Below are positions 39,141 to 62,719 of a stretch of DNA of 64,000 nt, piece after piece. The notes beneath the pieces are model-generated. The model was not told the DNA's origin. It was given only the letters and a program-made list of their open reading frames with translations, and did not search any database. Made by a program: the position numbers and the translations under genes. The DNA is from Ylistrum balloti (Eukaryota). How positions within the stretch are numbered: the first letter of the stretch is position 1; every line of letters starts with the position of its first letter. Location: NCBI RefSeq assembly GCF_031769215.1, contig NW_026781953.1:248001-312000 (forward strand), in the 5' to 3' direction.

Positions 39141-39249
39141 ACAATATCAGTACTCTGGGCCATTTGGCTAAAAAGAAAAATTAGAAATTAGAAATTGTTT
39201 GTGACGCAAAACACAAAGCACCAGAAAAAAAAGGTGATCGCAAGAAGTC

Positions 39250-41310
39250 ATATTTTACCTGTTGCTTCCTCTGTTCTCTAGACATACATCTCGCCTGTTG
39301 CTTTCTCTGTTCACTAGACATACATCTCACCTTTTGGTTTCTCTGTTCACTAGACATACATCTCACCTGTTGCTTTCTCTGTTCTCTAGACATACATCTC
39401 ACCTGTTGCTTTCTCTGTTCACTAGTCAAACATCTCACCTGTTGCTTTCTCTGTTCACTAGACATACATCTCATCTGTTGCTTTCTCTGTTCACTAGACA
39501 TACATCTCACCTGTTGCTTTCTTTGTTCACTAGACATACATCTCACCTGTAGCTTTCTCTGTTCACTAGACATACATCTCATCTGTTGCTTTCTCTGTTC
39601 ACTAGACATACATCTCATCTGTTGCTTTCTCTGTTCACTAGACATACATCTCACCTGTTTGTTTCTCTGTTCACTAGACATACATCTCACCTGTAGCTTT
39701 CTCTGTTCTCTAGACATACATCTCACCTGTTGCTTTCTCTGTTCACTAGACATACATCTCACCTGTTGGTTTCTCTGTTCACTAGACATACATCTCACCT
39801 GTTGCTTTCTCTGTTCTCTAGGCATACATCTCATCTGTTGCTTTCTCTGTTCACTAGACATACATCTCACCTGTTGCTTTCTCTGTTCACTAGACATACA
39901 TCTCACCTGTTGCTTTCTCTGTTCACTAGACATACATCTCACCTGTTGCTTTCTCTGTTCACTAGACATACATCTCACCTGTTGCTTTCTCTGTTCACTA
40001 GACATACATCTCACCTGTTGCTTTCTCTGTTCACTAGACATACATCTCACCTGTTGCTTTCTCTGTTCACTAGACATACATCTCATCTGTTGCTTTCTCT
40101 GTTCACTAGACATACATCTCACCTGTTTGTTTCTCTGTTCACTAGACATACATCTCACCTGTTGCTTTCTCTGTTCACTAGACATACATCTCACCTGTTG
40201 CTTTCTCTGTTCACTAGACATACATCTTCTGTTGCTTTCCTTCTCTAGACATACATCTCACCTGTTGCTTTCTCTGTTCACTAGACATACATACATCTTT
40301 CTCTTTTTATCCTTTTTTCTCTGCACTAGACATACATCTCATCTGTTGCTTTCTCTGTTCACTAGACATACATCTCACTTTGGCTTTCTCTGTTCAAACA
40401 TACATCTCACCTGTTGCTTTCTCTGTTCTCTAGGCATACATCTCATCTGTTGCTTTCTCTGTTCACTAGACATACATCTCACCTGTTGGTTACTCTGTTC
40501 ACTAGACATTTCTCTGTTCACTAGACATACATCTCATCTGTTACTTTCTCTGTTCACTAGACATTCTCATCTGTTGCTTTCTCTGTTCACTAGAAAATCT
40601 CACCTGTTTGTTTTCTGTTCACTAGACATACATCTCATCTGTTGCTTTCTCTGTTCACACTGTTCACTAGACATACATCTCATCTGTTGCTTTCTCTGTT
40701 CACTAGACATACATCTCACCTGTTGCTTTCTCTGTTCTCTAGACATACATCTCACCTGTTGCTTTCTCTGTTCACTAGACATACATCTCACCTGTAGCTT
40801 TCTCTGTTCTCTAGACATACATCTCACCTGTTGCTTTCTCTGTTCACTAGACATACATCTCATCTGTTGCTTTCTCTGTTCACTAGACATACATCTCACC
40901 TGTTGCTTTCTCTGTTCACTAGACATACATCTCACCTGTTGCTTTCTCTGTTCTCTAGGCATACATCTCATCTGTTGCTTTCTCTGTTCACTAGACATAC
41001 ATCTCACCTGTTGCTTTCTCTGTTCACTAGACATACATCTCACCTGTTGGTTACTCTGTTCACTAGACATACATCTCACCTGTTGGTTTCTCTGTTCACT
41101 AGACATACATCTCATCTGTTACTTTCTCTGTTCACTAGACATACATCTCATCTGTTGCTTTCTCTGTTCACTAGACATACATCTCACCTGTTGCTTTCTC
41201 TGTTCACTAGACATACATCTCATCTGTTGCTTTCTCTGTTCACTAGACATACATCTCACCTGTTGCTTTCTCTGTTCACTAGACATACATCTCACCTGTT
41301 GCCTTCTCTG
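39250..41310. repeat. 36-bp minisatellite (about 57 units) containing the exon end plus 5' splice site
   Basis: Minus-strand unit AGAGAAAGCAACAG|GTGAGATGTATGTCTAGTGAAC; continuous with the real donor at 41296. Confidence 0.95.
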
Positions 41311-41543
41311 CTTTACTCTCCTCCTTTCCATTCCTTTCTGGAGATTTGTCTCCCTTTTTATCCTTTTTATTCTTGAAAGGGGACAATCTCACTTTGGAGT
41401 TCCTGTCAAACAGTCCTCCACCCTTGCTAGATGAACCTGATCGTTCTGGTGAGGATCCTTTTTTCTTACCCCGATCTGGAGATTTATCTGCTTTAGCAGA
41501 TTCATCAGTAGATGTTTTCTTTTTTTTGAAAAAACCTGCAAAT
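41296..41543 (-). CDS. CARMIL: CARMIL basic exon (FAGFFKKKK...KAEKAT)
   Basis: 248 nt, phase 2-1, aaacag|A ... G|GTGAGA. Confidence 0.85.
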
Positions 41544-41764
41544 CTGTTTGAAAACAATGCATAAATGAGATTAAAACCTGTGTTTTCAAAGCCTTTTAGA
41601 AACTCATTGATGGTTAATTGGTGAACAGAATCTGATATTATGTTAAATATACAAAAAAAAACTATTTTAGAGAAATAGAATTAACTTAATTAAAAACAAA
41701 ATCTCTCAATTATAGGCTGTATTTTGGAGAGGGTGTAGAAAGATAAAACTGGCAAGCCTCTGCC

Positions 41765-42925
41765 CGAACCTACCCTATTATCAACAGACCTCTGGGAGGA
41801 TATTTACCCTATTATCAACAGATCTCTGGGAGAATATTTACCCTAATTTCAACAGACCTCTGGGAGGATATTTACCCTATTATCAACAGACCTCTGGGAG
41901 GATATTTACCCTATTATCAACAGATCTCTGGGAGAATATTTACCCTAATTTCAACAGACCTCTGGGAGGATATTTACCCTAATATCAACAGGCCTTTGGG
42001 AAGATATTTACCCTATTATCAACAGATCTCTGGGAGGATATTTACCCTATTATCCACAGACATCTGGGAGGATATTTACCCTATTATCAACAGATCTCTG
42101 GGAGAATATTTACCCTAATTTCAACAGACCTCTGGGAGGATATTTACCCTATTATCAAAAGACCTCTGGGAGGATATTTACCCTATTATCAACAGATCTC
42201 TGGGAGAATATTTACCCTAATATCAACAGGCCTTTGGGAAGATATTTACCCTATTATCAACAGATCTCTGGGAGGATATTTACCCTATTATCCACAGACA
42301 TCTGGGAGGATATTAACCCTATTATCAACAGATATCTGGGAGAATATTTACCCTAATTTCAACAGATCTCTGGGAGAATATTTACCCTAATATCAACAGG
42401 CCTTTGGGAGAATATTTACCCTATTATCAACAGATATCTGGGAGGATATTTACCCTATTATCCACAGACATCTGGGAGGATATTTACCCTATTATCAACA
42501 GATCTCTGGGAGAATATTTACACTAATTTCAACAGACCTCTGGGTGGATATTTACCCTATTATCAACAGACCTCTGGGAGGATATTTACCCTATTATCAA
42601 CAGATCTCTGGGAGAATATTTACCCTAATATCAACAGGCCTTTGGGAAGATATTTACCCTATTATCAACAGATCTCTGGGAGGATATTTACCCTATTATC
42701 CACAGACATCTGGGAGGATATTAACCCTATTATCAACAGATCTCTGGGAGAATATTTACCCTAATTTCAACAGACCTCTGGGAGGATATTTACCCTAATA
42801 TCAACAGACATCTGGGAGGATTTTTACCCTATTATCAACAGACCTCTGGGAGGATATTTACCCTATTATCAACAGACCTCCGGGAGCATATTTACCCTAT
42901 TATCAACAGACCTCTGAGATAATTA
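41765..42925. repeat. 34-bp minisatellite (about 34 units) containing a donor-like site
   Basis: Minus-strand unit GTCTGTTGATAATAGG|GTAAATATCCTCCCAGAG; real donor AAAGG|GTAATTATCTCAGAG. Confidence 0.95.
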
Positions 42926-42926
42926 C

Positions 42927-43004
42927 CCTTTTTTCTTTTCTGGCTCCTTTTCTTTCTCCTTCGGATTCTTATCTTTTTTGATTTTCGCATCTGATATGGA
43001 CTTG
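42927..43004 (-). CDS. CARMIL: CARMIL exon (KSISDAKIKKDKNPKEKEKEPEKKK)
   Basis: 78 nt, phase 2-2. Confidence 0.8.
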
Positions 43005-43729
43005 CTGTGAACATAAATATACGCATATAATCATCAGACTTAAGAGCTCTTCAGAAACTGCTGTTTGTTGCTGTTTGACCACATCATCATTATCACTTGA
43101 GTTTATGCCCCATGTAGAGCCTAGGTCATTTTGTAGTAGCTGGTTGTTACCTCAATGAACAACAGACAGGAGGTCCATCAAACACCATACAGGAAAAGTA
43201 CAGTACAGTGCTATGCACAAGGACACAACTACATTAAAACAGACTGACACAGCCATTTCTTGGTTTTCTGAGGACCCCAAACCATCATGGGTAATGAGCA
43301 TCAATCTTCACACCTGAGACTTCATTAAGGTTAAGTAGGCGAACCGACAGAAATATCGAAGCCCCACATTATCAAATCTTCTTTCATGTGTCTGAATTCA
43401 TTAAGAAACATATCTTTACATGGGTACTTAAGTAGATGATCCCAATTGAACAATGAGGAGAATAATATTTACGGAAGTGTTTCTTTTAATTCAGTTTGGA
43501 CTATGTCAGTTCAATTCTAGCATCTCACTGATATGAATTACTCTTTCGTTTTGAGAATCTTTGTATCTTTAATACATAAATACATCTGATATGTGTGTGA
43601 AATTATGAACAATTTAACAATTATGGTAGACAATTTTCCTATATTGTGTTGAACAATGTTAAGAAAAATAGGCATAAATAAAATTATGCAGATTCCATTA
43701 TATTGACATAAACAAGAACCTAAAGCAGC

Positions 43730-44390
43730 CAATTACTTCTACTGTGATATTAACAGGAATAATAGCTAGCTACCTCCCTTGTGATATAAACAGGAACCTA
43801 AAAGTTAGCTTTCTTCCTGTGATAAAAACAGGAACATAAAGCAGCCTATTTCCTCTACTGTGATATTAACAGGAATAACAGCTGGCTATCTCCCTTGTGA
43901 TATAAACAGGAACCTAAAAGTTAGCTTTCTTCCTGTGATAAAAACAGAAACATAAAGCAGCCAATTTCTTCTACTGTGATATTAACAGGAATAACAGCTG
44001 GCTATCTCCCTTGTGATATAAACAGGAACCTAAAAGTTAAGATAAAAACAGGAACATAAAGCAGCCAATTTCCTCTACTGTGATATTAACAGGAATAACA
44101 GCTGGCTACCTCTCTTGTGATATAAACAGGAACCTAAAAGTTAGCTTTCTTCCTGTGATAAAAACAGAAACATAAAGCAGCCAATTTCTTCTACTGTGAT
44201 GTTAACAGGAATAACAGCTGGCTATCTCCCTTGTGATATAAACAGGAACCTTAAAGTTAGCTTTCTTCCTGAGATAAAAACAGGAACATAAAGCAGCCAA
44301 TTTCCTCTACTGTGATATTAACGGAATAACAGCTGGCTACCTCTCTTGTGATATAAACAGGTACCTAAAAGATATTAACAGGAACATAAA
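43730..44390. repeat. 116-bp higher-order repeat of three ~39-bp subunits
   Basis: actgtgatattaac at 43741 and 43857; begins about 40 nt inside the intron after the CPI exon. Confidence 0.9.
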
Positions 44391-44429
44391 ACAGCAGTCA
44401 ACAAACCTGTAAAAAGACCTGTTACTGAC

Positions 44430-44664
44430 CTTAACTGGGTGCTTGGGACCTCTGTAGCTTGAGCTGTAACAGTGTGCTCCCTTACTGTCTGTCTGTTGAA
44501 GAATGTGTCAAGACCTTCATCTGCTTGGAGTGGTTCATTTGTGGCTAACTTTGTCGAAGCGCCTGGTCGTCGTGACTGGTGGTTCTTTTGTCTCTTGGCG
44601 CGGCCCTTATTTGGATTAAACAGCTTCGGACCAGTCTCCCCAAGGTTATCCAGATCAATGGTGT
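44430..44664 (-). CDS. CARMIL: CARMIL exon with CPI and CSI motifs
   Basis: KLFNPNKGRAKRQKNHQSRRP (CPI-like, core 44594-44623) and QADEGLDTFFNRQ (CSI, 44498-44521; human CARMIL1 has RVDEGVDEFFTKK). 235 nt, phase 1-2, AAG|GTCAGT. Confidence 0.9.
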
Positions 44665-45596
44665 CTGATAAATTAAACCAAAATTTTCTATTAAAACTTT
44701 CAAACGTTACTGATATCTTAGAATCACTGGTTACAATAACAAAATCCACTATGGTTTGGTGTTTGACATAAAGAACACATATTTCTACAGTAAGTCTTCG
44801 GATAGTTTGGTAAGTTTCAAAAAGTGCATTTCACCATGAATGAACACACATTGGCAAATAGCATCAGCAATAAGCATCAGGAAGATTTTGTACACCAGCG
44901 TTACTGTGTTTATAACTCTCTCAGACTGATATCTTCACTGTTATACTTAGTACTAATTACTGGCTAGTCTACTAACCATGGTATCTGTAGTCTTTGTCAG
45001 ACAACAAACTACATACGATGAGAAACAGAATATCAAATCAGTCTGAATTAATATTTATTTAGATCTACTGTAAGATAACATTCTTTCATATGCGATTTAC
45101 TTGAGAAAATATTGTGATTGCAGCAAAATTGTTAAAAAAAAAGAAAAATTATAATTAAAGCTTGGATGATTACAGATCTTAACATTTAAACTCTGATGAT
45201 AATGATAATTTGAGGTGGCTGCCTCCATGGTTAAAATCCTAAAATCGACAATGCACTTCAAATTTTACTCGATCTATTACTGGATCGGGAAACATCATAT
45301 CCAAGTAATATAAATTTGTGAAATGAAACTCTGTCCTGAAAATTCCTGATAGTGGAGCAACCAAGTTAAACATGGGTATAAACACACTGAGTAGGGCCTT
45401 TCATAAATATACCCTAACCTCTCACCTCTTTATTGTGATCTAAATCTGATGAGGGGCTAAGGTCAAAAGTCTTTCCAAAAACATGGTGTGGGAATGTTAG
45501 TTCCAGTAGATGGAAGTGTCAACACAAAGAATTACGTCAACATATTGGAGGAAAATCTATGTACTGTAGTTGTTGAAAAAAACAAGCCAATAGGAC

Positions 45597-45810
45597 TTGT
45601 TCTGAGGGCAAACCTTACTAGGCCATACATAAGGTCACTATATGACTCATTACCAAAGCCAATATGAATTGTTCTGAGGGCAAACCTTACTAGATCATAC
45701 ATAAGGTCACTATATGACTCATTACCAAAGCCAATATGACTTGTTCTGAGGGCAAACCTTACTAGGCCATACATAAGGTCACTTTACCTCATTGTTCTGA
45801 GGATAAATGG
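45597..45810. repeat. 72-bp tandem repeat, about 3 copies
   Basis: tctgagggcaaacc at 45601, 45673 and 45745. Confidence 0.9.
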
Positions 45811-45879
45811 GCCTGTTTGAAAATATTTAAATTCTCAGGTAAGTGGCATGTTTTGTTTTATAAATATCAAAGAGAAACA

Positions 45880-46245
45880 TACTCCCAGACTAAAAAGTTT
45901 GCAGCTCACGGCCGCCATTTTGGGGAAAGACTTTTGACTTTGGCTGTATAAGGGGTTCACCAGATATTCTGTACACAAAGTTCTCACTTTAAAAAAAGTC
46001 AGGGTGACCTTGGACCTTTAACCTTCAACCTTCACTGTTGACCACCAAAACCTGACCTGGTGTAGAACGTGACAGGAGTGATGCTATGGTGGGAATGAAC
46101 TAAATCTGTCCTTGGGTTCATGAGATCTTCTACACAAGAATATCACAGATGCATAGACATATGGACGGACAGATGGACAGACAGACTGACAAACAAATTT
46201 ATTACTATTTACCCCTTTTATTTCAGTGAAGGGTATAATAACGAT
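45880..46245 (+). mobile_element. HINE-like element fragment
   Basis: gtgaccttggacc motif, (GACG/GACA)n tract and a terminal imperfect hairpin taccc...gggta. Confidence 0.45.
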
Positions 46246-46258
46246 TATTGATAGTTAC

Positions 46259-46345
46259 CTGATGTGACAGAAGATGTCATGGAGCTGGACGGCTCTTCAG
46301 CAATGGCTTCAGTCTTGCTTAGCTGAATGTTATTGGCAAGGTCTT
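46259..46345 (-). CDS. CARMIL: CARMIL exon (EDLANNIQLSK...SSVTS)
   Basis: 87 nt, phase 1-1, CAG|GTAACT. Confidence 0.75.
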
Positions 46346-46973
46346 CTGTAGATCCCACTACGTAAAACAGTCACAGATACAGAATAAAATCTGCTCTTCA
46401 GATTCCATTAAAACAGACACCTGCAGTTTTCCTCGATTACATAGTGGGCAACATTTTCATGAGTGACTATTTTTGAAGAGATGATGTAAATTCAATATAT
46501 GTCTATTTATAATTTATGCAACTATAGTTACATCAAGTTCAATGGGCAAATTAAAAAATGCATTAAGTTCAATGGGCAAATTAATAAATACATTAAGTTC
46601 AATGGGCAAATCACATGATCAGTCGTCCATATACAAAGTAAAACATGGTGAAAGGACTAACTCAGAGCTAGTGTGACAGACTATCTTATCAGGATCTGAA
46701 TATGAATATTACAGTGTCTATTTCTAATTAATTTTCTCACAATTGGCAAGGAAAATGAAAAAAAAGGAAGAAATTCTTCTGGCATCTGAAACAGATTGAT
46801 AAGCAGCAAATAGATTAGTTTTTTTTATATACCTCCTTTCTCATAAACCTGCCTTGATCAAGTAATTACCATAATAATTTTTTTTGTAACTACAATGGCA
46901 TGATATAAATCGAAGGACTTTTTAAGTGCTAAAATACTTCAGCTAATCTTGCATATCACAACACCTTTTTTAC

Positions 46974-47306
46974 CTGTGATTAGAGGGTTGGCCAGAGGCT
47001 TGGTAACCCTCTGACTCTCATTCTGTTGCTTGGCAACCCCCTGACTTTGACTCTCAGACTTTCCTGAGACTGATAACAGCACAGACCTTCTCTTGATCCG
47101 AGGCTTGGGAACAGGATCTTGTGAAGTAGGGGTGGATTCTGGGGAGGGGCGAGTCAATGTGGGTGTGGTCTGAGGGGTTGTGACTGGCGTGACCTTTGGG
47201 GTTGTTTGTATAGGGTCAACAGGGTCACCTTTGGGAGGAGAATTTTCAGCAGTGCTTTCCAATTTTCGGTTGTGCATTTGTAAAGCTTTTTGTACCTGCT
47301 CAGCAT
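46974..47306 (-). CDS. CARMIL: CARMIL exon (DAEQVQKALQ...ANPLIT), symmetric and possibly alternative
   Basis: 333 nt, phase 1-1, cttccttaccag|AT ... G|GTAAAA. Confidence 0.75.
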
Positions 47307-47707
47307 CTGGTAAGGAAGCAAGCATGGTTAGAATCTCAACACTACAAAGCACGCAGTTATATAAAGGTTTCATCTGTAGTCCAAAAACTCATGTTTAGAA
47401 ATTCGAAACAAAACAAAAAAAATTTTAAATTTACAATTTCTTCCGAAATTTCCAATGATGTATATCCGATAATGATTTCATGTCCAATTTTCCAACAAAA
47501 AAATTGAAAATTTGTAAAGTTTTTGGTTTTGCAGATCAATGAATATTGTGACTGATGATTTAGCCATACTAGTGGTAATCCTGTGTCAACATTGAGAAGT
47601 TCGTCTAAATTGTCTTTGATAAACCATTGGATAGCTATCATTTATAATACCATCCATTCAAATACTGTCTTAACTTTTGATTGGTCAGATTTAGTTCCAT
47701 AGGGTTA

Positions 47708-48015
47708 CCACTAGAGGGCAGTGTGATGCCTTATAAACACTGTGCTTCACAGCCGTAAGAAAAAAGCAGAAAGTAATGAAAACGAGCCACTAGAGGGCAG
47801 TGTAGTTTTCCGTTTTACCAATAGAGGGCAGTGTACCTAGGTAGTAATCCTTATTTAACCAAAAGAAGGCAGCAAAGAAATAATTTTAACCTTAAGAAGG
47901 TAGTGTTGAAATCCACTAAATGGACTGAAATCCATTCCGTTTATCAATCAGAGGTCAATGTATTGTATTGTATGTTCAAATGAATATAGAACATTCTTTA
48001 ACCACTAGAGGGCAG
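47708..48015 (+). promoter_or_regulatory. Cluster of four co-oriented CTCF-like motifs
   Basis: CCACTAGAGGGCAG at 47708, 47787 and 48002; CCAATAGAGGGCAG at 47818. Confidence 0.6.
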
Positions 48016-48655
48016 CACAATCAAATCATATAGCTTCAAAGGGAGAAACAAGAATATTTTAACGAAGTAAACTTAAACATTACGATGAATTGTAGAAAAA
48101 ATTGTCTTGGTTGATAAGGCAAAACACTAGTTCTATCTAATAAAGATATAGTGATATAACAATCTGTGGACACTCAACACTGTGACAGCAGAGTGACAGA
48201 CCTTAGCAGAGAAGCAGTAGAAGTAGTGATAACAGAATTCTAAATAGACTTCAGATAAGTATAAACTTTTAGCTATAATTGTTTATAAATAGGGCCTTAT
48301 TAGGTAATATCATCAGATAAGATAATAAATAAACTTGTTTACATCAATCAAACATTAGAAATGTTTTCAACATATGTCAACTCTTTTCAGTACTGATTCT
48401 CTGCTGGTATAAGGCTTCCATACAATATTTGTAAGATATATTATATAGATATATATTTTTTTTATATTTTGTATATCAGTGTATATAATATTGATTATAT
48501 GTAGAGTGATACATTTTTATAAACAATATAAATTATAAATATAGTTATAATTTTGTGTATAAATAATATGTATTTCTAATATTTGTATATATAAAGAATA
48601 TTTGTACATATGGTAGGATGGTAGCTTTTGGAGAAAGTCTGTATCACTGACAGCC

Positions 48656-48980
48656 AAGTTATAGATTAGTAACCAATCAGGGACAGAACTGATTTATTTA
48701 TCAAAAAAGTACTGTATTTGTCTATGTTGTTTTCACTGAACTAAAATAAAAACATTTCAGATGAAATTTTACTTGTTATTATATTTTCATTATAACCACT
48801 CTTTTGAAATTTCAGTTAGGAATTCCATGTGAATATCTCTTGCAACTGAATTCGTGATTTATCTTGAAGTTATAGATTAGTAACCAATCAGGGACAGAAC
48901 TGATTTATTTATCAAAAAAGTAGACTGAGTTGTTTTCACTGAATAAAAACATTTCAGATGAAATTTTACTATATTTTCAA
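48656..48980. repeat. Local duplication of about 210 bp
   Basis: aagttatagattagtaaccaatcagggacagaactgatttatttatc at about 48656 and 48867. Confidence 0.85.
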
Positions 48981-50940: not shown

Positions 50941-51007
50941 CTATAACAGTTGGAGGTCTAATCATTCGTTTAATTTTGCTCTCTCTTCTGTCGATCATCG
51001 GTGAATC
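50941..51007 (-). CDS. CARMIL: CARMIL exon (DSPMIDRRESKIKRMIRPPTVI)
   Basis: 67 nt, phase 0-1, ATAG|GTAAGT; aligns by eye with human CARMIL1 TPKSKRKSIHSRMLRPVS. Confidence 0.75.
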
Positions 51008-54000
51008 CTATAGTAAAAAAGAGATAATTGTTGAAGGCAAAAAAAAAAAAAATCTATCTAACACCCTTCAGATTTATAGTTAATGGATAAATATTATTAT
51101 ACAGGGTCATCAAAATAGCAGTAATCAGTGAAATACATTTCCATGGCAACAAAATATTAAATATGACAAATCGTGTATGAAATAACCATTTAAATTTTTC
51201 TTATTTTATGCATCAGATCACCGTGTTGTCATGTTACATGTAGCACCAGTGTTAGTTATGTATGTCTTATCAATGGTATTTCAAGCATTCACTCAAACAC
51301 AATCAATTACGATTTACAATAATTTGATTTCTTGAATCAACAAATATATTTTCCACTTTTGTGAATATATTTGCAAGTTTTTCTAAGCAGCCTGGTTTCA
51401 AATTAAAAGGGCAATCTGTTACTTCTTTAGGACAAACCTTTTGTAACTACGTCCTAAACAGTTCACTCAAATGCTGTTTAAATACACATATAGGGATGCT
51501 TGGAGGAAATATTGGTATTTACATGCAACATTCATTTGAAGGGCAATATTGTTCTTTTAGTAAATTCCTAAAAACAAACTTAAATCTGACATAAATATCA
51601 CAGCTTAGTAACTAACACTTTATGGTAGTAACTTTGTGTTATACATATATTTCGGATGATTAGCCTGTGCCTTAGAACTGGACGAATAAGACTTTATAAA
51701 GCAATGCCATGTGATCCTTAAGCAAGCTAATAAGCAGAAAAATTGAGCTGTAGATGCAGCATAGCAACTCATGTGAATCGTGGATTGTTTGTACGATTTT
51801 ATCATTATCAATTAAAAACCAGAGGCAAGATTTGCATTTTATAATTATCAAACCAAACATTTAATTAGTGTTACACTAAGTGTCTATTGATGATATGCAA
51901 AATTTCTGTATTCAAATACAATTTTCAAACATTTCAAATTAAAATTTTCATTAATTAAGACAAATTTATCCCACAAGATGTTCGCTTATCCATGTCAAAT
52001 TTACCATATCAGGGTTTATAAAAATAAACATAAAATACTAAATAATTTTTAACTTCAAAAGCACAAACGTCTTTCACATCGGTAAACTGGAATGTATGTC
52101 AAAATCTAAGATGCAATATAACTATATTAAGAACAAGACAATGAATTCTAGGTATTAGTGATGAATGCCTAATATGTAACTTGTATCCTTCAGGACAAAT
52201 ATCACTGTAAAATGTGGATAGACGAATAAGGCACAGTGACATTATAACTAAAGACTCTAAATTATGGTACTTACTATGTTTATCAAAACCAAAGCATCAT
52301 AGTTATTTTTAGATAAAAAAAAACCTTTTTTAAGATAAAATGTCTTAATAATTTCATTGATTTTGTAAAATGTCTACTTTTCGAGAGAACTTCTGTTTGA
52401 AAAAAATCAAAGCTGCGGGAAAGTTAACATCAAGCTTCAATTAATCTGTTTACATTGATTAGCCAAGAACTTTACAGAAACAAGTACATGTACCTCAAGT
52501 TCCTAAGCATATAAAATCAGATATTGAATAGGAAAAAGTTTGCCATTTTGTAGTTCCATAATAAAGTATGGGAACAGTTTTTGTCAAAAAAAAATGAAAA
52601 TAGAAAAATCTATTATATATACAAGTTACATACGATAGCTGTTGCTACCAACTGATGATGTCATTTCCTGTCTCATTCTGAAAGGGAATGTGAATCTGTT
52701 AAAAATTTAATACTTTTCTTTATAAAGCCCTTCCCCATTAGGCAAACAGATGCATTAATTGGTTTTACAAAAAGGAAATTAGTTAACATAATGATATATT
52801 AGACTGTTCAGAGAGTAAGAACAATATCCTGACACACTAATCATCATAATATGTCAATTACTCATAAATCAACAGGCATTAATATGATTTTTAAAAAAAG
52901 CATAAACTATGCATTTTCTACAATCTACATGGCTTTGGTCCTGCCTCTACCAATCTGTCAAGCAACAAGAAAAAGGCAACTCTGTGCAAAAAATGCCACT
53001 CTAAATCAGCATGTAACCATGATCTACAAGGGGAGGTAACTGTAACCTCAATCCAATACAAGGGGAGATAATACTTGTGAAGTGTATTTGGATGTAGCTG
53101 GTACAATGGGGTGTAGCTTCTGTTCAATACCATGCAATCACCTTTCAGAGGTAGCCTTTTTTTAAATAGTGGTCTATACACACTTGAAGTGGTGTGAGAT
53201 TTCCTGGTCTCAACGACAAAATAATCGAGATGGGTTATTTCCCTTTCATAATCACAATAGCATGTCAACATTAGAAAGCAATGTTATACCATCAATCAAT
53301 ACGTGGTAAGACAATCATAGTAAGAGAAGAAAAACCATTCACTCTGTTGTTGGTGAGATAGGGGATCACAACACTTGGAGGAAGATTATAAATTGTAAAT
53401 ACCTAGTTTTTTCCAACTTAATAATCTCCTCCTAGCTCATCCCCAGTGGTGTGAAAAATTCTATTAATCTTCCCTTAAGAAAAATTGTAAAAAATCAATT
53501 TTTCCATCATTGCTAAGGGGATGCAATCACTATCTTGTGTAAAACTAATGTCTTGATTTATATCTAATATACATTTTTACATTTAATTCAAAAGAACAGA
53601 ACACACCTTTTTTCTGAAGTCATGCTGGTATGATTGCAAATTGTATACAATATATGAAGCTCACTATAGTACATATCTATGTCTTAAGTCAAATAATACT
53701 GTATATTCTTTAAACAAGACTAAGAAAAAAAGTATCTATGATCAGAGTAAAATATATTTCACATCTGAAAACATCTATGAATATTTAAAGTGGAAAAATG
53801 TAAATATGAAATATACAGTGATACCAATATGTAATGTTTTATTATCTATATATATATATATGTATATGAGAGGTACTAAAGCTGTGTGAATCAGGTCTTG
53901 CCAGGTCAAAAGCAGAAAAAAAAAGATGTCTTCCAGTTGATGAAAAACACTTACGCAGTCTTGTGTAAAGAGTGAGTGCCATCGCGGTATCAGCTGATTA

Positions 54001-54426
54001 TCAAGAAAACAAGCTGTCAATTTCACTACACATAAAAAAATGATCTAACATATTCCATCTTTAAAGACAGAATACATCTAACTCATGTTTTACTTCCAAA
54101 CGCACATAACATCTAACTTATACTATCATTCTAAACAACCAACACAAAAATGTACATCTTAAATTCAGATTTAATATCAAGAAATCTGACTAGGAAGATA
54201 TTTGTGCACATGGGAATAAAACTCTGAATACATGCAGTATACAATTACATCATTCTGTATAATTATAGAGTAGTGTAATGCCATGTTTAAATATTTGCAA
54301 TTTGATGCAAGGTTAGAGGAGAGAAACAAGTACAGACAGGATACATCAATTTTCATATCTGTTAGTTCATCACACTTAAATATTTATCTGTCATATACTG
54401 CTGTGTTTCAGTCATTCGTTTTCACA

Positions 54427-54735
54427 TCGTTATGTAGACATGATGTTTAGTGTCACTAAGAGTATTTCTTAATTGATATCATTATGTAGACATGATGTTT
54501 AGTGTCACTAAGAGTATTTCTTAATTGACATCATTATGTAGACATGATGTTTAGTGTCACTAAGAGTATTTCTTAATTGATATCGTTATGTAGACATGAT
54601 GTTTAGTGTCACTAAGAGTATTTCTTAATTGATATCGTTATGTAGACATGATGTTTAGTGTCACTAAGAGTATTTCTTAACTGACATCATTATGTAGACA
54701 TGATGTTTAGTGTCACTAAGAGTATTTCTTAATTG
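54427..54735. repeat. 52-bp minisatellite, 6 copies
   Basis: ttatgtagac at 54430 and 54482. Confidence 0.95.
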
Positions 54736-55429
54736 CATTATAAAAATAATAATACATATCAGAACCAAAGTGATTTCAAGGAGCCTTCATTGACAATGAT
54801 GAATTCAGTCTTTTTAAAGGAAAAAGTGTCCATATTACATTTTTTATAAGATCTGCCTTATTGTAACCTCTGTCCAAGTGTCCATATTATATTCTATATA
54901 AGATTTCCCTACTGCTGTCCAAGAGTTCTTGTTATATTCTGTGTAAGATTTCCCTACCACTGTCCAAGTGTCCTTGTTAAAATCTATATAATAGTTACAC
55001 ACATGGATACACAAGTGCATTTAAACCAGCCACCAATAGCAGGAATCTGCCACCTGCAAGAAAGGCAGCCGCCTTGATGTCTTAGAAAGCATATATATAA
55101 ACCAAGACCAACAGGCAGCAAAGGTCATCCAGCGTCGGAGGATGCAGAAGATGAGCTAGACATGCCAAGGACGTTTATGCTAGTTACCTTGGTAACAACC
55201 TCAAGTCTTTTTGATACTGGCTAAAAGTTAAGGACATATATTAATATACAAAGCAAAACAGTTGTCAGAGCTCTTCATCAGTCATTAGCACTGAAGAAAT
55301 GGCACTGAAGAGATCTCCCATAGTCCAAGTCTGCAAGCACAAATTTGTGGCAAACAGATCATGAAGATTTGATTTAGTCAACATCTATTTAAAATGGTGC
55401 AACAGCTGATTTGAATGGCTAAAAGGTTA

Positions 55430-56120
55430 GATATCCTGATGATATCTGACTAGAGGGACAGATATCCTGATGATATGACTAGAGGGACAGATATCCTGAT
55501 GATATCTGACTAGAGGGACAGATATCCTGATCATATCTGACTAGAGGGACATATATCCTGATGATAAGACTAGAGGGACAGATATCCTGATGATATGACT
55601 AGAGGGACAGATATCCTGATGATATGACTAGAGGGACAGATATCCTGATGATATGACTAGAGGGACAGATATCCTGATGATATGACTAGAGGGACAGATA
55701 TCCTGATGATATCTGACTAGAGGGACAGATATCCTGATGATATGACTAGAGGGACAGATATCCTGATGATATCTGACTAGAGAGACAAGTATCCTGAGGA
55801 TATCTGACTAGAGAGACAAGTATCCTGATGATATCTGACTAGAGGGACAGATATCCTGAGGATATCCTGATGATATGACTAGAGGGACAGATATCCTGAT
55901 GATCTGACTAGAGGGACAGATATCCTGATGATATCTGACTAGAGGGACAGATATCCTGATGATATCTGACTAGAGGGACAGATATCCTGATGATCTGACT
56001 AGAGGGACAGATATCCTGATGATATCTGACTAGAGGGACAGATATCCTGATGATATCTGACTAGAGAGATAAGTATCCTGAGGATATCTGAGTAGAGGGA
56101 CAGATATCCTGATGATAAGA
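55430..56120. repeat. 29-31-bp minisatellite, about 22 copies
   Basis: Unit gatatcctgatgatatctgactagagggaca. Confidence 0.95.
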
Positions 56121-56489
56121 CAGTATTATTTTGGTTAACTGATGGAGGTTATAATGAGTTATGCTTTTCAATCTCCACAAACACAGCTGTATATAAATAC
56201 TTGATATTATTTTACTTCGATATCATTTAAATATTTCAGCCTTAACCGATAATATTCCAGCGAAAAGCACTAGAGGAATTATGTGTGGAAAGCACGTTTC
56301 TCATGCTATATAAACACTTATAAAAATACATATACATACAAAATATACACCATATATAAACATCTATATATATGTAACTCTCAAGAGCTTTACAATTTCA
56401 TTGTTCATTTTTCTCAATAGAGGTCCTTGCTTGCTCTCACATTTTCACTCTTAAAAAACATGAATTCCTGTCGTGTGGGGAGATAGGTA

Positions 56490-57235
56490 AGACGAGCAGA
56501 TATGATTTGTTTATACGCAGGAAATATCAAAGATGTCTTGATATTAGTTTCTATCTGAGGGGAGATATCAAAGATGTCAGAATATTTTATTTCTTATCTG
56601 AGGAGAGATATCAAAGATGTCTGGATATTATTTCTTATTTATTAAGACGAGCAGATATGATTTGTTTATACGCAGGAAATATCAAAGATGTCTTGATATT
56701 AGTTTCCACTGAAACAAGATATATAAGATGTCAGAATATTTTATTTCTTATCTGAGGGGATATATCAAAGATGTCTGGATATTATTTCTTATCTGAGGGG
56801 AGATATCAAAGATGTCAGAATATTTTATTTCTTATCTGAGGGGAGATATCAAAGATGTCTGGATATTATTTCTTATCTATATCAACATATAAAAATATAT
56901 TAGTTTCTATACAAAATATACAAATATATAAATATTTATATATCTTATCTGAGGGGATATATCAAAGATTTCTGGATATTATTTCTTATCTGAGGGGAGA
57001 TATCAAAGATGTCAGAATATTTTATTTCTTATCTGAGGGGAGATATATCTGAGGGGAGATATCAAAGATGTCAGAATATTTTATTTCTTATCTGAGGGGA
57101 GATATCAAAGATGTCCAGATATCATTTCCTATCTTAGGGGAGATATCAAAGATGTCCAGATATCATTTCCTATCTTAGGGGAGATATCAAAGATGTCCAG
57201 ATATCATTTCCTATCTTGGGGGAGATATAAAAGGT
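56490..57235. repeat. Composite degenerate tandem repeat
   Basis: Recurring ttatctgaggggagatatcaaagatgtc units. Confidence 0.85.
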
Positions 57236-58338
57236 TGTCCAGATATGATTACATGGGGAGGGGGGGCGGATATCAAACTTTTGTGACATTTCAGCTTCAT
57301 GAAGCTATACGTTTTTAATTCCAATAAGTATACATGCATTGTATGTTCTGCTCATATGATTTTAAGGATAATCACTACAAAGCCATATACGTATGCAGTA
57401 AATGAACACATGTTAATATATTTAATCTGAAATATTCTGATCCTGAAAACATAATCATATTCCCAGCAGTAGAAACAGGAATGGTTACCAATGATATCTA
57501 AATAAGTAAAACATTGTTTTCTGTATTAGTCACACTTGATATAAAGAGCACTAACAAAAACTATACAGGTGAATATTAACACAAAATGGTAACACATTTT
57601 AGTTGTACACCTGTTAAAAATTATATGGTATATTGGTAATTTCATATTATTTATTTGAAGATCAAATCTTCCTGAATAAAGATGGCAGCAGTTCAACCTA
57701 GAAGGATTGACAAAGGGCAAAGCACTGCAGAACAACGCCAGAAGACACTTAAAATGGTCCAAGACTTGTGTTTAGTTTTTAATATAGCAGGTCTCCAAAT
57801 TAAACGAAGTTATTACAATTTTTTTTAAGTTGGTAGCTGTTGTGTTAGTAATGCAATGAGCATTTTTCCATATCAAATGAAATGTTTTCAGAATTGGAAA
57901 AAAAAAAAACAGAAAAAAGAAATATTAGATGCATTTGATTTATACCAAGTTGAAACCTGTTTCCGCACACCAGAATCTGGGCTACAGTACAAAATACAGG
58001 ACATCACTTTTACAGGAGCAACTGATGATATTACAAACATTTAAGGGACAGTGTTTTATTTCCGATATCTTTGACAAGGTAATATTTATTTCACTGCGGT
58101 ATGAAAATTGTACGTCACAGTATTTAAGGTACCTATATATTCCTAAAATTATCACTGAAGCCTGCGCATTAACAGTGAATAATACCTTCATCAAATTGAA
58201 AAATCATTGACCCTATTTCACGAATACTTTGTACAATGTAATTACAGGGTGATATGAAGTATTTGTGAATTTTGAGAAGATTTGGGTCAGATATTCGTAG
58301 AAGACTTTGTGGAACGTGAGACAAGTAAAGAAATATAC

Positions 58339-58503
58339 CATTGGTGAGGAGTCGACCTTGAGCGAGATTTTTTCTTGACTATCAGTGTCTGGTTTCTCTT
58401 TGCCTTCATCTGCTTTCTCCTCCTTGCTTTCCATCTCTTCTTTCTTAGATTCACGCTGACTTTTCATCGATGTACTGCTCTTCATCACATTCAGATGGTT
58501 TGT
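58339..58503 (-). CDS. CARMIL: CARMIL exon (TNHLNVMK...KVDSSPM)
   Basis: 165 nt, phase 0-0. Confidence 0.8.
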
Positions 58504-58544
58504 CTGAGGTCATAGGTCAATATATTAATATTATAAGATTCTTT

Positions 58545-58700
58545 CATCTGTCAGGATGTAGGATAGGAATATTCCACCTGAGAGGTCACAAAATATCGTA
58601 AAACCTGAGACTTTCTGAAAGATTTTACCATATTTTGTGACCTTGAGGGTGAAATATCCCATCCTCCACCCTGACAAGAGTATTTTTCTATCATTTCTCA
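58545..58700. mobile_element. Palindromic MITE-like element (same family as 37150-37295)
   Basis: tattccacctgagaggtcacaaaata ... tattttgtgaccttgagggtgaaata. Confidence 0.5.
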
Positions 58701-59361
58701 TTCTAAAATATAGATAAAATACTGGCTTTAGAAATTGACAAGGTACTATTAGAGAGACCATATTAAAAAAAAATCATGTTTTATATAAAGCAATTCATCC
58801 TCAAGTTGACATAAAAAATTCTTTCCCTGTACTTAGATTTGGCAAACAAAGTTTGTCCCAGAAAATTATGATTAAATATAAATCACTGCAAATAATTATT
58901 TGTACAAAGTAAAATTTGGTTTGCCTATAGCTACTGGACAAAATTATGACCGACGGACGAATGGACGGACAAAGCGACGACTATTTGATCTCTCGTCCGT
59001 CAGCATAATTAATGTTTCTACACCATGAATATTTCATATTATACAAGAATTAGATGTGTTTGAAAATTCTCAAAACTGAAAACAGTCGACATCAATACAA
59101 AAATATCTCTGAACATCAAAAAATTATTATGATCTTCGCTTTTGTGTGGCAAAGTAAGACATCAAACCATTAGAAAAGACATCAAACCATTAGAAAAGAC
59201 ATCAAACCATTAGAAAAGATATCAAACCATTAGAAAAGACATCAACTTTATGAAAAGACACCAAATTTATACCACTGATATCCAAAGCAATGCTGATTCT
59301 GAATGGATTAAATGAATGCATTTCTCTTAAATATCATACAGATTATGCCATAAATACATAC

Positions 59362-59449
59362 CAGAGTTTTGTGACTCGATGTCAGGCTGTCTATAACTTC
59401 ATCCATGACTTTGTCAGAGATGTGGGTAGCTACCACTAAATTCAGCTCG
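59362..59449 (-). CDS. CARMIL: CARMIL_C exon (SELNLVVATHISDKVMDEVIDSLTSSHKTL)
   Basis: 88 nt, phase 2-0; human CARMIL1 has [30 protein letters not shown]. Confidence 0.9.
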
Positions 59450-60190
59450 CTGTAAAATTAGAAAATTTGTCACAGATGTGGGTAGCTACCACTAAATTCA
59501 GCTCGCTGTAAAATTAGAAAATTTGTCACAGATGTGGGTAGCTACCACTAAATTCAGCTCGCTGTAAAATTAGAAAATTTGTCACAGATGTGGGTAGCTA
59601 CCACTAAATTCAGCTCGCTGTAAAATTAGAAAATTTGTCACAGATGTGGGTAGCTACCACTAAATTCAGCTCGCTGTAAATTTAGAAATTTTGTCACAGA
59701 TGTGGGTAGCTACCACTAAATTCAGCTCACTGTAAATTTAGAAAATTTGTCAGAGACGTGGGAAGCTACCACTAAATTCAGCTCGCTGTAAAATTAGAAA
59801 ATTTGTCAGAGATGTGGGAAGCTACCACTAAATTCAGCTCGCTGTAAAATTAGAAAATTTGTCAGAGATGTGGGTTGCTACCACTAAATTCAGCTCGCTG
59901 TAAATTTAGAAATTTTGTCACAGATGTGGGTAGCTACCACTAAATTCAGCTCGCTGTAAAATTAGAAAATTTGTCAGAGATGTGGGTTGCTACCACTAAA
60001 TTCAGCTCGCTGTAAAATTAGAAAATTTGTCACAGATGTGGGTAGCTACCACTAAATTCAGCTCACTGTAAATTTAGAAAATTTGTCAGAGATGTGGGAA
60101 GCTACCACTAAATTCAGCTCGCTGTAAAATTAGAAAATTTGTCACAGATGTGGGTAGCTACCACTAAATTCAGCTCGCTGTAAGATGTAG
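59420..60190. repeat. 56-bp minisatellite (14 units) made of the 3' splice site plus exon head
   Basis: Minus-strand unit TTTTCTAATTTTACAG|CGAGCTGAATTTAGTGGTAGCTACCCACATCTGTGACAAA; AG sites every 56 bp from 59450 to 60178. Confidence 0.95.
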
Positions 60191-60447
60191 CTAGCTTTTG
60201 CAGATATTTAATTCAATAACAGCATTAGACAGGTAGGTCAAGTTGTTTTTATACTATTTCCAACAGATTCTACACAAAGTAAGCCAATCATCACATACTT
60301 TAATCTATAAAATATCTCGGTTTGGTATTTGGTGAAATCTTGAGGCAATGACTGAGGTTACCTACCTTAGTTTATTAAATATCTCTGTTTCTACACTGTC
60401 TAGGATATGTTTGGTGAAATCTTGAGGCAATGACTGAGGTTACCTAC

Positions 60448-60557
60448 CTTAGTTTATTAAATATCTCTGTTTCTACACTGTCTAGGATATGTTTGGTGAA
60501 ATCTTTAGGAAAGGAACTTTTTTCTCCACAATTTGTCTCCAAGTCAGACTGCACTTC
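60448..60557 (-). CDS. CARMIL: CARMIL_C exon (EVQSDLETNCGEKSSFPKDFTKHILDSVETEIFNKL)
   Basis: 110 nt, phase 0-2; human has …[28 protein letters not shown]. Confidence 0.9.
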
Positions 60558-60780
60558 CTTTAGAGTGAAAGAAAGATATATGAGGGATGAAATTGAAATT
60601 ACGGAATATCAGGCAATCAAAAATGTCATCCATTTCTTTTTTTTCTTAGCTTATGTGAATTTGATCAATAATTTCATATATGTAAGTTTTACAGAATTTT
60701 TCAAAGTCTGTAAACTAATCAGATGGTAACATATAAAGAAATTTATAGATTCAAGAGCGATGAGAAGATGTTTTACTTAC

Positions 60781-60843
60781 CTTATCAGCCATCACAGAAG
60801 CACACTGGTTACTAGTACATTCTAACATGTCTTCAACTGTTTT
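60781..60843 (-). CDS. CARMIL: CARMIL_C exon (KTVEDMLECTSNQCASVMADK)
   Basis: 63 nt, phase 0-0, AAG|GTAAGT. Confidence 0.9.
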
Positions 60844-61011
60844 CTGTACCAAAAATGAAAACAATTCTCATCAACATATTCCTGTTTGCATCTTGCTTAT
60901 TTGTGAACAATCAATTGATTCTCAAATTAAAACTTTTTCATGGTGTTAGTTTACTCTCAATAAAATCATTTTCTTATGTCAGAGACACAGTCCAGAGGAA
61001 AATTTTACAAG

Positions 61012-61143
61012 ACAAGAGGCCCATATGGCCTGTATTGCTCACCAGGTTTTTTTTGGCTGAAATTGCTTCATTAAAACCAAGCACACAACACAAAAAATAT
61101 CTATTTTCCTATTGAAAACTTCGGACTAGGTGAGCTAAAAAAA
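61012..61143 (+). mobile_element. Miniature HINE-like deletion derivative
   Basis: acaagaggccc...gctcacc at the 5' end and ggtgagctaaaa at the 3' end (sub-terminal inverted repeat gctcacc/ggtgagc), with only about 85 bp between. Confidence 0.6.
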
Positions 61144-61519
61144 CTATCATCATTATCACCTGCTCAGAAAACTAGATTACGAGATAGCACTATTTAGTGA
61201 CTTATAGTACTACACTGTGCAGAGGTGTTGTAATGTGGTAGAAAAACCCCCGTTGCATCATTCATGCAAGTAATGTGCATACAGCACAAAGTCTCAATAA
61301 TATATATTACAGAATTCTTTTTACTTGACAAACAGAAACACAGACGGAGCCCCTTTTAATTTCTATTCCAATTTCACTACGCAGTGAATAAAAATATATC
61401 TGACGCTTTTTAGGGTTAATGTTCATATCCAGTTAACTTTTACATGCGTAATTGGAGCGGGTTGGTGTGGCTTGTATATAGTGTTAAATACTCTCTCTGT
61501 CACTCAGCTGATTGAGCAT

Positions 61520-61593
61520 GCTTCTTTGGCTCAGTTGGTAGAGCAGGGTTGATTATCACGCTAGAGACCTGGGTTCGATTCCTGGTCAGGCCA
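61520..61593 (+). mobile_element. tRNA-derived element (SINE head or tRNA pseudogene)
   Basis: A box TGGCTCAGTTGGTAGAGC, B box GGTTCGATTCC, intact D stem; acceptor and anticodon stems are mispaired. Confidence 0.7.
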
Positions 61594-61669
61594 TTGATAG
61601 GAATGTGTATTTTCCTGGTTCTTTCACACACGTGTCAACAATAGAACAAGACACATAGCAACAACATAC

Positions 61670-61786
61670 CTTCATATGTTTCTCCAACACCTGTCTCAGT
61701 GTGTCCGACATCTCTTTAAGACATGCTTCCACAGGGTTGCCTGTTGACAGTGACTTGTTGGCAATCACTTGTAGCTGTGGTAGCAA
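61670..61786 (-). CDS. CARMIL: CARMIL_C exon (LLPQLQVIANKSLSTGNPVEACLKEMSDTLRQVLEKHMK)
   Basis: 117 nt, phase 0-0; human has LLPNLYHV…[24 protein letters not shown]. Confidence 0.9.
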
Positions 61787-62054
61787 CTGGAGCAGGAATA
61801 AAACATTATTAGAGTTATCTCCCTTTACCAATAAGGTATTAGTAACATATGGATACATGTATTTGCTTTGATTAATCAAAATATTATAAAAATTCTTTTT
61901 TAAGTAAGTTTGTCTGTATCAAAATTTTCTGAATTCGACTACATCGCCCACATTAAATTATCAATGATTTGTGAGATATGGGTTGTCAATATTTCTCACA
62001 ACATAATCTAAGTCATTTCCTCGGTAATGTAATTCTACATATCTAGGCAACTTG

Positions 62055-62590
62055 ATGTGTCCTGTGCCTGTGTTTTGTGATGTAAATAAGCTGTTAACTA
62101 GGTGTGTCCTGTATCTGTGTATTGTGATGTAAATAAGCTGTTAACTGGAGGAGGACTCCTGTATCTGTTATGTGATGTAAATAAGCTGTTAACTGGAGGA
62201 GGACTCCTGTATCTGTTATGTGATGTAAATAAGCTGTTAACTGGAGGAGGACTCCTGTATCTGTTATTGTGATGTAAATAAGCTGTTAACTGGAGGAGGA
62301 CTCCTGTATCTGTGTTTTGTGATGTAAATAAGCTGTTAACTAGGTGTGTCCTGTATCTGTATTTTTTTTATGTAAATAAGCTGTTAACTAGGTGTGTCCT
62401 GTATCTGTAATTGTGATGTAAATAAGCTGTTAACTGGAGGAGGACTCCTGTATCTGTTATGTGATGTAAATAAGCTGTTAACTGGAGGAGGACTCCTGTA
62501 TCTGTTATTGTGATGTAAATAAGCTGTTAACTGGAGGAGGACTCCTGTGCCCGTGTATTGTGATGTAAATAAGCTGTGTGTGTCCTGTAC
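62055..62590. repeat. 48/49-bp minisatellite (about 11 units) with mutated donor copies
   Basis: Minus-strand ACAG|ATACAGGA or CAG|GCACAGG, versus the real AACAG|GTACAGGA at 62591. Confidence 0.9.
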
Positions 62591-62719
62591 CTGTTTGGAG
62601 TTGCCTGCATCCTTTATAAGACTGTTGGCCACATTTATGTCAGACTGGAAGTCTTCTGTGTTTCCGTGGTCAAGAGCATTCACAGTGTCCTGGTTCTGGA
62701 CTACCAATCTGTCCATTGT
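62591..62719 (-). CDS. CARMIL: CARMIL exon (TMDRLVVQNQDTVNAL...LIKDAGNSKQ)
   Basis: 129 nt, phase 0-0; human has MIDRICVKVQDHLNSL…LMRDAKNSKT. Confidence 0.9.

What the first reader, a model, noticed from the sequence alone, without database searches (positions are those of the whole stretch)
39250..62590. Recurrent minisatellites seeded on CARMIL splice junctions create dozens of decoy splice sites
Seen: five separate tandem expansions in this one gene have units made of exon edge plus splice site. They are a 36-bp donor array, a 34-bp donor array, a 56-bp acceptor array, an 82-bp donor duplication and a 48/49-bp mutated-donor array. In the four cases with an intact GT/AG, using a decoy gives a premature stop within about 20 codons of the new junction or less. 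In the one case where read-through stays open for about 69 codons, the decoys have lost GT. Inference: either a mutational process biased to splice junctions and tolerated because of NMD, or a copy-number-tunable unproductive-splicing control of CARMIL dose. With n=5 the correlation is only suggestive.
Basis: partly seen in the sequence, partly recalled or inferred. Interest (0 to 1): 0.8.

Follow-up and report, generated by a model that had tools for sequence, protein, structure and literature searches.

The report
Splice-junction minisatellites in scallop CARMIL
Five introns of a scallop CARMIL-like gene hold tandem copies of their own exon-intron junction; the structure is real and dense, but it is a known kind of repeat ("mirage" minisatellite, as in human F7) and nothing here shows it regulates the gene.

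Summary
Observation confirmed. A minus-strand CARMIL-like gene (Pfam CARMIL_C on three exons) has five tandem arrays whose unit is exon edge plus splice site:
- 36 bp x58
- 34 bp x34
- 56 bp x14 (acceptor)
- 82 bp x2, plus an older third copy
- 48 bp x12

About 83 decoys keep GT or AG. A frame-consistent exon chain and contiguous CARMIL_C profile matches place the real site at the exon-proximal copy each time.

- A stop within 21 codons is the default here: 76% of positions on this strand reach one, and donors without arrays do the same.
- The 36-bp array has lost GT in about a third of its decoys although its stop comes at once.
- Junction association is nominally above chance: 5 of 18 arrays against 0.8-1.6 expected, P 0.001-0.014.
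- No RNA run exists, so decoy use is untested.

This kind of repeat is already described: amphioxus "mirages", and human F7, IFI6, CBS, LMNB2 and PDGF. In F7 only the most upstream donor is used. This scan has already reported the same thing many times on other DNA of this genome.

Verdict: a new member of a known kind, most likely a tolerated by-product of local tandem duplication.

The parts
62591..62719 (-). Exon E1 (129 nt, phase 0 to 0); its donor AAACAG|GTACAG is the first unit of array A5
   Evidence: Canonical AG/GT and an open frame chained to E2-E6
62026..62595 (-). Array A5: 48/49-bp units, 12 units. The first is the real junction (about 5 nt of exon). Nine decoys read CAG|AT; the second and the last unit read G|GC
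   Evidence: read-through stays open for 68 codons
61670..61786 (-). Exon E2 (117 nt)
60781..60843 (-). Exon E3 (63 nt)
60448..60557 (-). Exon E4 (110 nt); matches CARMIL_C profile 12-50
60280..60504 (-). Array A4: 82-bp unit = last 57 nt of E4 + donor AAG|GTAGGT + 25 nt of intron. Two 100% identical copies, then an older copy about 63% alike that still carries AAA|GTATGT
   Evidence: word depth about doubled in the DNA run X1 over this stretch
59410..60209 (-). Array A3: 56-bp unit = 16 nt of intron end (TTTTCTAATTTTACAG) + first 40 nt of E5. 14 units, all with AG; the last unit is the real acceptor
59362..59449 (-). Exon E5 (88 nt); matches CARMIL_C profile 50-82, so it abuts E4
58339..58503 (-). 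Exon E6 (165 nt, K/E-rich)
   Evidence: Frame-consistent with E5
46973..47337 (-). Exon E8 (approximate). Donor ATCACAG|GTAAAA fits the phase of E9; the acceptor is uncertain
44430..44664 (-). Exon E9 with the capping-protein-interaction region; matches CARMIL_C profile 198-271
42927..43004 (-). Exon E10 (78 nt); its donor AAAGG|GTAATT is the first unit of A2
41780..42932 (-). Array A2: 34-bp units, 34 units, exon share at most 6 nt. All 33 decoys keep GT (AGG|GTAAAT). Variants recur at 238- and 408-bp spacing
41296..41543 (-). Exon E11 (248 nt, basic); its donor CAACAG|GTGAGA is the first unit of A1
39235..41308 (-). Array A1: 36-bp units, 58 units, exon share 13 nt. 36 of 55 scored decoys keep CAG|GTGAGA, 16 read CAG|AT, 3 read otherwise
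37634..37887 (-). Exon E12
37300..37498 (-). Exon E13
36417..36554 (-). Exon E14 (proline-rich, runs to a stop codon)

Best explanation
These are exon-intron boundary minisatellites ('mirages'). A short stretch that happened to span a splice junction of the CARMIL-like gene was duplicated in tandem. It then grew by replication slippage and unequal exchange, as the higher-order variant patterns and the repeated rounds at one junction suggest. Each event arose on its own and at a different time: unit identity runs from 88% to 100%. The arrays are tolerated because splice-site choice favours the copy next to the body of the exon, which is the first donor or the last acceptor. All other copies are then removed with the intron. 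They are a by-product of a genome that makes minisatellites easily, acting on what were short introns (172-282 nt for three of the four affected introns once the arrays are collapsed, 1071 nt for the fourth). They are not a device for setting CARMIL dose. Shown here: the anatomy, the exon edges, the decoy counts and the reading-frame consequences. Inferred: the mode of growth, and that the decoys stay silent.
For: - Arrays and registers.
- Exon edges: frame-consistent chains and abutting CARMIL_C profile matches.
- The units are local, with no copy elsewhere in the window.
- The exon share of the units is scattered (5, 6, 13, 40 and 57 nt, that is 0.10-0.71 of the unit), as random placement of a founder duplication predicts.
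- Collapsed intron lengths of the four affected introns (A3 and A4 share one): 172, 264, 282 and 1071 nt.
- Thirteen other arrays in the same gene are not on junctions.
- Variants in A2 recur at 238- and 408-bp spacing. A4 has an old third copy behind two identical ones.
- Precedents with splicing data: in F7 IVS7 only the most upstream of identical donors is used; IFI6, CBS, LMNB2 and PDGF are listed as similar cases (PMC1557585). Amphioxus mirages affect both donors and acceptors and leave regular splicing intact (PMC3087553, PMC3902484).
- Earlier notes of this scan report the same structure in many unrelated genes of this genome. These are leads, not checked here.
Against: - Five of 18 arrays on junctions is 3-6 times the uniform expectation, so some bias towards junctions or towards exon-near DNA may exist.
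- Loss of GT is the commonest variant inside A1 and affects every decoy of A5. This hints that decoys are not fully neutral.
- No RNA data could be laid on the region, so the silence of the decoys is inferred from other species.
Confidence: 0.8

Rival explanations
1. A mutational process biased to splice junctions (for example DNA damage or template switching coupled to co-transcriptional splicing, or a recombination-prone motif resembling CAGGT) seeds minisatellites preferentially at junctions. The arrays are still without function.
For: Nominal enrichment in this gene: 5 observed against 0.8-1.6 expected, P 0.001-0.014. Three more arrays lie within 100 nt of junctions. Earlier notes describe the pattern as frequent in this genome.
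Against: The test is post hoc, on a gene picked because it looked striking. The unit boundaries sit 5 to 57 nt into the exon, not at the junction. Most of the ancestral introns were short, which raises the chance of spanning a junction. One earlier follow-up on another gene judged the frequency compatible with chance (unchecked).
Confidence: 0.25
2. The decoys are used and give unproductive, NMD-targeted transcripts, so array copy number tunes CARMIL dose.
For: About 83 intact decoy sites match the real ones in strength. Every use of one would bring an early stop. In human IFI6 and CBS the two proximal pseudo-sites are used.
Against: There is no RNA evidence. Early stops are the default for any intron read-through here. 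GT is lost in about a third of A1 decoys and in all A5 decoys, which is the opposite of conserving a working device. By earlier notes the same structure occurs in many unrelated genes. In F7 the pseudo-sites stay silent.
Confidence: 0.05
3. The decoys are mildly harmful and are being disabled by selection. Arrays persist only where the decoys are silent or have lost GT.
For: +1 G to A is the most frequent variant within A1 (0.29 of decoys). In A5 two different GT-killing changes occur: GAT in 9 units and GGC in the two edge units. Precedent: in CBS a substitution in the second repeat is reported to prevent multiple alternative splicing (title cited in PMC1557585).
Against: A2 and A3 keep every site, 33 of 33 and 13 of 13. 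Variants spread by block duplication, so the number of independent events may be as low as one per array.
Confidence: 0.15

Closest known systems
Amphioxus 'mirage' minisatellites (Adh3, globins BflGb6 and BflGb9, troponin C, PGBD5)
   Same: Both are tandem duplications whose unit spans an exon-intron boundary. Both occur at 5' and at 3' boundaries. Many copies keep AG/GT, and unit sizes run from tens to about 160 bp. Regular splicing is reported unaffected (PMC3087553, PMC3902484).
   Different: This is a different phylum (a mollusc, by earlier notes of this scan). There are five arrays in the C-terminal half of one gene, and copy numbers reach 58, against the 3 and 6 repeat units reported for the two haplotypes of globin BflGb6. 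No transcript data are available here.
Human F7 intron 7 37-bp VNTR
   Same: The first monomer is exon end plus donor (4 bp of exon + 33 bp of intron), followed by identical pseudo-donors, and its length is polymorphic. A2 and A5 here have a similarly small exon share (PMC1557585).
   Different: F7 has 5-9 copies, and experiments showed that only the most upstream donor is used. Here there are up to 58 copies and no experiment.
Human IFI6 (6-16), CBS intron 13, LMNB2 and PDGF boundary minisatellites
   Same: The first monomer of each spans an exon-intron boundary. IFI6 has 25 pseudo-sites. In IFI6 and CBS the two proximal pseudo-sites are used; in LMNB2 and PDGF only the real site is used (as listed in PMC1557585).
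   Different: Those are single arrays per gene, and all are donor arrays. In IFI6 the extra donors add residues in frame (my recollection of Turri et al. 1995, not read here). Here every decoy brings a stop, apart from the GT-less A5.
Intron gain by tandem duplication of an AGGT-bearing exon segment (Rogers model)
   Same: A junction-spanning or AGGT-bearing duplication creates extra splice sites that could define new introns or exons (discussed in PMC3087553).
   Different: Nothing here indicates that a decoy has become a real exon edge. The exon chain uses the exon-proximal copies.

Membership tests
Exon-intron boundary ('mirage') minisatellite | Head-to-tail tandem array of units of about 10-160 bp | tested here: met
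   TRF rows for all five arrays; own segmentation
Exon-intron boundary ('mirage') minisatellite | One end unit is the real junction, so the unit holds exon sequence plus the splice site | tested here: met
   Exon edges from the frame-consistent chain and from CARMIL_C profile contiguity of E4 and E5. The exon share is 5-57 nt. For A2 and A5 the share is small (at most 6 nt).
Exon-intron boundary ('mirage') minisatellite | Further copies repeat the splice consensus (pseudo-sites) | tested here: met
   A1 36 of 55, A2 33 of 33, A3 13 of 13 and A4 1-2 copies are intact. In A5 all are mutated.
Exon-intron boundary ('mirage') minisatellite | Regular splicing uses the real site and the pseudo-sites are mostly silent | not testable with these tools
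   No RNA run holds the stretch. Support is indirect only: the open frame and the profile contiguity hold only with the exon-proximal copies.
Exon-intron boundary ('mirage') minisatellite | Length polymorphism or instability (VNTR behaviour) | tested here: inconclusive
   The short-read contigs of run X1 break inside the arrays. Only the neighbouring 20-bp array at 59156 is seen one unit shorter. Depth is about doubled over A4.
Regulated unproductive splicing (AS-NMD, poison sites) | Transcripts joined at the alternative sites exist and rise when NMD is blocked | not testable with these tools
   No RNA run
Regulated unproductive splicing (AS-NMD, poison sites) | Alternative sites conserved beyond neutral expectation | tested here: not met
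   Within the arrays GT is lost in 19 of 55 A1 decoys and in all A5 decoys. In A2 and A3 the splice positions are invariant, but so are most other positions. Conservation across species was not tested: the word search with exon E5 found nothing.
CARMIL (capping protein regulator and myosin 1 linker) gene | CARMIL C-terminal region with the capping-protein-interaction motif | tested here: met
   PF16000 scores 31.9 bits on E9 and 32.0 bits on E5, both above the 25-bit cut-off; E4 scores 18.3 bits at the adjoining profile positions. The N-terminal leucine-rich-repeat part lies outside the window.

The most novel reading that the evidence does not exclude
This scallop genome has a tandem-duplication process that really is biased to splice junctions, or the arrays act as sinks for U1 or U2AF that slow or gate splicing of the host intron. 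In that case the density seen in CARMIL (five junctions, about 83 live decoys) would reflect mechanism or function and not chance plus tolerance.
Probability: 0.1. Interest if true: 0.6.

Novelty: new member of a known kind. Interest (0 to 1): 0.25.

Why it matters
The locus is a natural test bed for splice-site choice. One gene offers 36 and 33 identical or near-identical live donors behind the real one, 13 live acceptors in front of the real one, and one array whose decoys have all lost GT. If cDNA data show that the decoys are silent, the scanning or exon-proximal rule shown for human F7 would extend to a mollusc, and to acceptors as well. If they are used, the locus would be a case of copy-number-dependent unproductive splicing. 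For genome annotation, such arrays are traps for gene predictors. As a discovery it adds little: the repeat type is already described, and this scan has reported it repeatedly in this same genome.

Tried and rejected
- **RNA evidence.** The look-up of sequencing runs returned no RNA run. The one holder, X1, turned out to be DNA contigs of another individual or haplotype, so no splice joints could be read.
- **Orthologue comparison.** The word search with the E5 open frame found no candidate. Full-length CARMIL relatives could not be reached, because a long query has no reference and the length window excludes them. I did not run the exhaustive protein search, because the family was not in doubt.
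- **Pfam on exons.** Scans of E1, E2, E3, E6, E10, E11 and E12-E14 gave no CARMIL_C match. These exons lie in poorly conserved parts.
- **The arrays as coding repeats.** Long open frames do run through A1, but in a frame other than the exon's and on both strands. That is expected for a unit without stops. Rejected.
- **The arrays as a dispersed repeat family or transposon cargo.** The units occur only in their own arrays within the window. Rejected for A2 and A5; for A3 and A4 the exon part is CARMIL_C-homologous.
- **The array at 43710-44391 as a sixth junction array.** It starts 39 nt after the E9 donor and does not include it. Rejected.
- **Literature search.** A first search failed on a term that was too short.
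Full report
**What is there**

The window is AT-rich animal DNA, very rich in minisatellites: 94 TRF rows, about 18 distinct arrays between 36.4 and 63.4 kb alone. Earlier notes of this scan call the genome the saucer scallop Ylistrum balloti. I could not check the species myself.

On the minus strand lies the C-terminal half of a CARMIL-like gene. Pfam CARMIL_C (PF16000) matches three exons:
- E9, 44430-44664: profile 198-271, 31.9 bits
- E5, 59362-59449: profile 50-82, 32.0 bits
- E4, 60448-60557: profile 12-50, 18.3 bits

**Exon model**

I read the flanks and spliced the candidate exons by script. This gave two chains with canonical AG/GT sites and no stop codon: E1-E6 (672 nt) and E9-E14 (open up to a stop at about 36417). 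E4 ends at profile position 50 and E5 starts at position 50. Homology therefore supports joining the first copy of the 82-bp duplication to the last copy of the 56-bp array. One exon (E8, about 46973-47337) has an uncertain acceptor. Further exons may hide in the 11-kb stretch between E6 and E8.

**The five arrays**

| Array | Place | Unit | Units | Exon share | Decoys |
|---|---|---|---|---|---|
| A1 | 39235-41308 | 36 bp | 58 | last 13 nt of E11 (real donor CAACAG\|GTGAGA) | 36 of 55 scored keep GT; 16 read CAG\|AT; 3 other |
| A2 | 41780-42932 | 34 bp | 34 | at most 6 nt of E10 | all 33 keep AGG\|GTAAAT |
| A3 | 59410-60209 | 56 bp = 16 nt intron end + first 40 nt of E5 | 14 | 40 nt | all keep AG; the last unit is the real acceptor |
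| A4 | 60280-60504 | 82 bp = last 57 nt of E4 + donor + 25 nt of intron | 2 identical + 1 old copy | 57 nt | the old copy is about 63% alike and still carries a GT |
| A5 | 62026-62595 | 48/49 bp | 12 | about 5 nt of E1 | 9 read CAG\|AT; the second and last units read G\|GC |

About 83 decoys therefore keep an intact GT or AG. The units occur only in their own arrays within the window, and none is expected by chance.

All are correct. Read-through stops after 5 codons in A1, 1 in A2, 1 in A4 and 21 from every A3 decoy. A5 stays open for 68 codons.

They carry no weight, however. On this strand of the gene, 76% of all positions and frames reach a stop within 21 codons (median 10). The seven donors without arrays stop after 27, 9, 17, 41, 18, 3 and 29 codons. 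In A2 and A4 the stop is formed by the donor consensus itself (GG|GTAA, AG|GTAG).

The proposed link, that GT is kept where a stop is near and lost where the frame stays open, is contradicted by A1. There the stop comes at once, yet about a third of the decoys lack GT.

**Is the junction association more than chance?**

I placed a founder unit of each array's period uniformly in the gene span and excluded placements wholly inside an exon or swallowing one.
- Expected 0.82 junction-spanning arrays of 18, or 1.07 allowing for four unseen exons. With 5 observed, P = 0.0008 and 0.003.
- After collapsing every array to one unit, which restores the ancestral intron sizes, the expectation is 1.19-1.56 and P = 0.005-0.014.

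This is a nominal 3- to 6-fold excess.

Three of the four affected introns were short before expansion. The five arrays sit in four introns, since A3 and A4 share one; their collapsed lengths are 172, 264, 282 and 1071 nt. The exon share of the units is scattered (0.10, 0.18, 0.36, 0.70 and 0.71 of the unit), as random placement predicts. The array edges do not coincide with the junction.

**Growth and age**

Unit identity ranges from 88-89% (A1, A2, A5) through 95% (A3) to 99-100% (A4), so the events are separate in time. Variants in A2 recur at 238- and 408-bp spacing, and marked variant units recur in A1. This fits growth by block duplication or unequal exchange. In A4 an old degenerate copy follows two identical ones. 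That indicates repeated rounds at one junction, with the remnant of the old copy supplying a 13-nt direct repeat for the new duplication.

**Other individual**

The only public run holding the stretch (X1) consists of DNA contigs with many single-base differences. The contigs break at the arrays. Depth is about doubled over A4, and the neighbouring 20-bp array at 59156 is one unit shorter. No RNA run is available, so use of the decoys is untested.

**Comparison with what is known**

[quoted passage not shown] They are reported in Adh3, the globins, troponin C and PGBD5. They occur at both 5' and 3' boundaries, and regular splicing is reported as preserved (PMC3087553, PMC3902484).

In humans the F7 intron 7 VNTR (37 bp, of which 4 bp are exon), IFI6/6-16 (25 pseudo-sites), CBS intron 13, LMNB2 and PDGF have minisatellites whose first monomer spans the boundary. 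For F7, 50 constructs showed that the pseudo-sites are functional, but that a 5'-to-3' scanning process selects only the most upstream donor (PMC1557585).

The present arrays meet the structural features of this class. The splicing feature cannot be tested here.

The scan itself has already reported the same structure, for donors and for acceptors, in many unrelated genes on other pieces of this genome. Two of the five arrays were also noted separately on this window.

**Verdict**

The locus is a dense example: five junctions of one gene and about 83 live decoys. The kind is known. The most likely reading is a tolerated by-product of local tandem duplication in a repeat-prone genome with short introns.

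Two things remain open:
- a modest bias towards junctions;
- mild selection against live decoys, hinted at by GT loss being the commonest variant in A1 and affecting every decoy in A5.

A dose-control function for CARMIL has no support.

Noticed in passing
window 26603-27022 (flank to about 27066): A 42-bp x10 array whose minus-strand units carry CATCTG|GTAAAC. The upstream flank reads like an acceptor (tgtgcag|ATGAAC) followed by TATGGTTTG|GTAAAC. It may be another exon-end-plus-donor array, in a neighbouring minus-strand gene.
   Followed up: no
window 22763-23082: A 46-bp x7 array whose plus-strand units carry a donor-like ACA|GTGAGT. The gene context is unknown.
   Followed up: no
window 62776-63344, 43710-44391, 59156-59265: Three further CARMIL arrays lie close to junctions without spanning them: 57 nt before the E1 acceptor, 39 nt after the E9 donor and about 97 nt after the E5 donor. 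The 20-bp array at 59156 is one unit shorter in the DNA run X1, so its length is polymorphic.
   Followed up: partly
window 61426-61581: Word depth is about 7200 in run X1 against about 10 around it, with many rearranged joints. This is a very high-copy dispersed repeat inside the E2-E3 intron.
   Followed up: no
window 7200-20000: The same series of arrays (31-, 33-, 32/66-, 51- and 80-bp units) appears twice, at about 9.8-14.3 kb and 16.7-19.7 kb.
   Followed up: no
window 38597-39049: A 154-bp x2.9 repeat with internal palindromic ATCCAAGATGGCCACC...GGCCATCTTGAAT sits in the E11-E12 intron just beyond A1. It looks like part of a mobile element.
   Followed up: no
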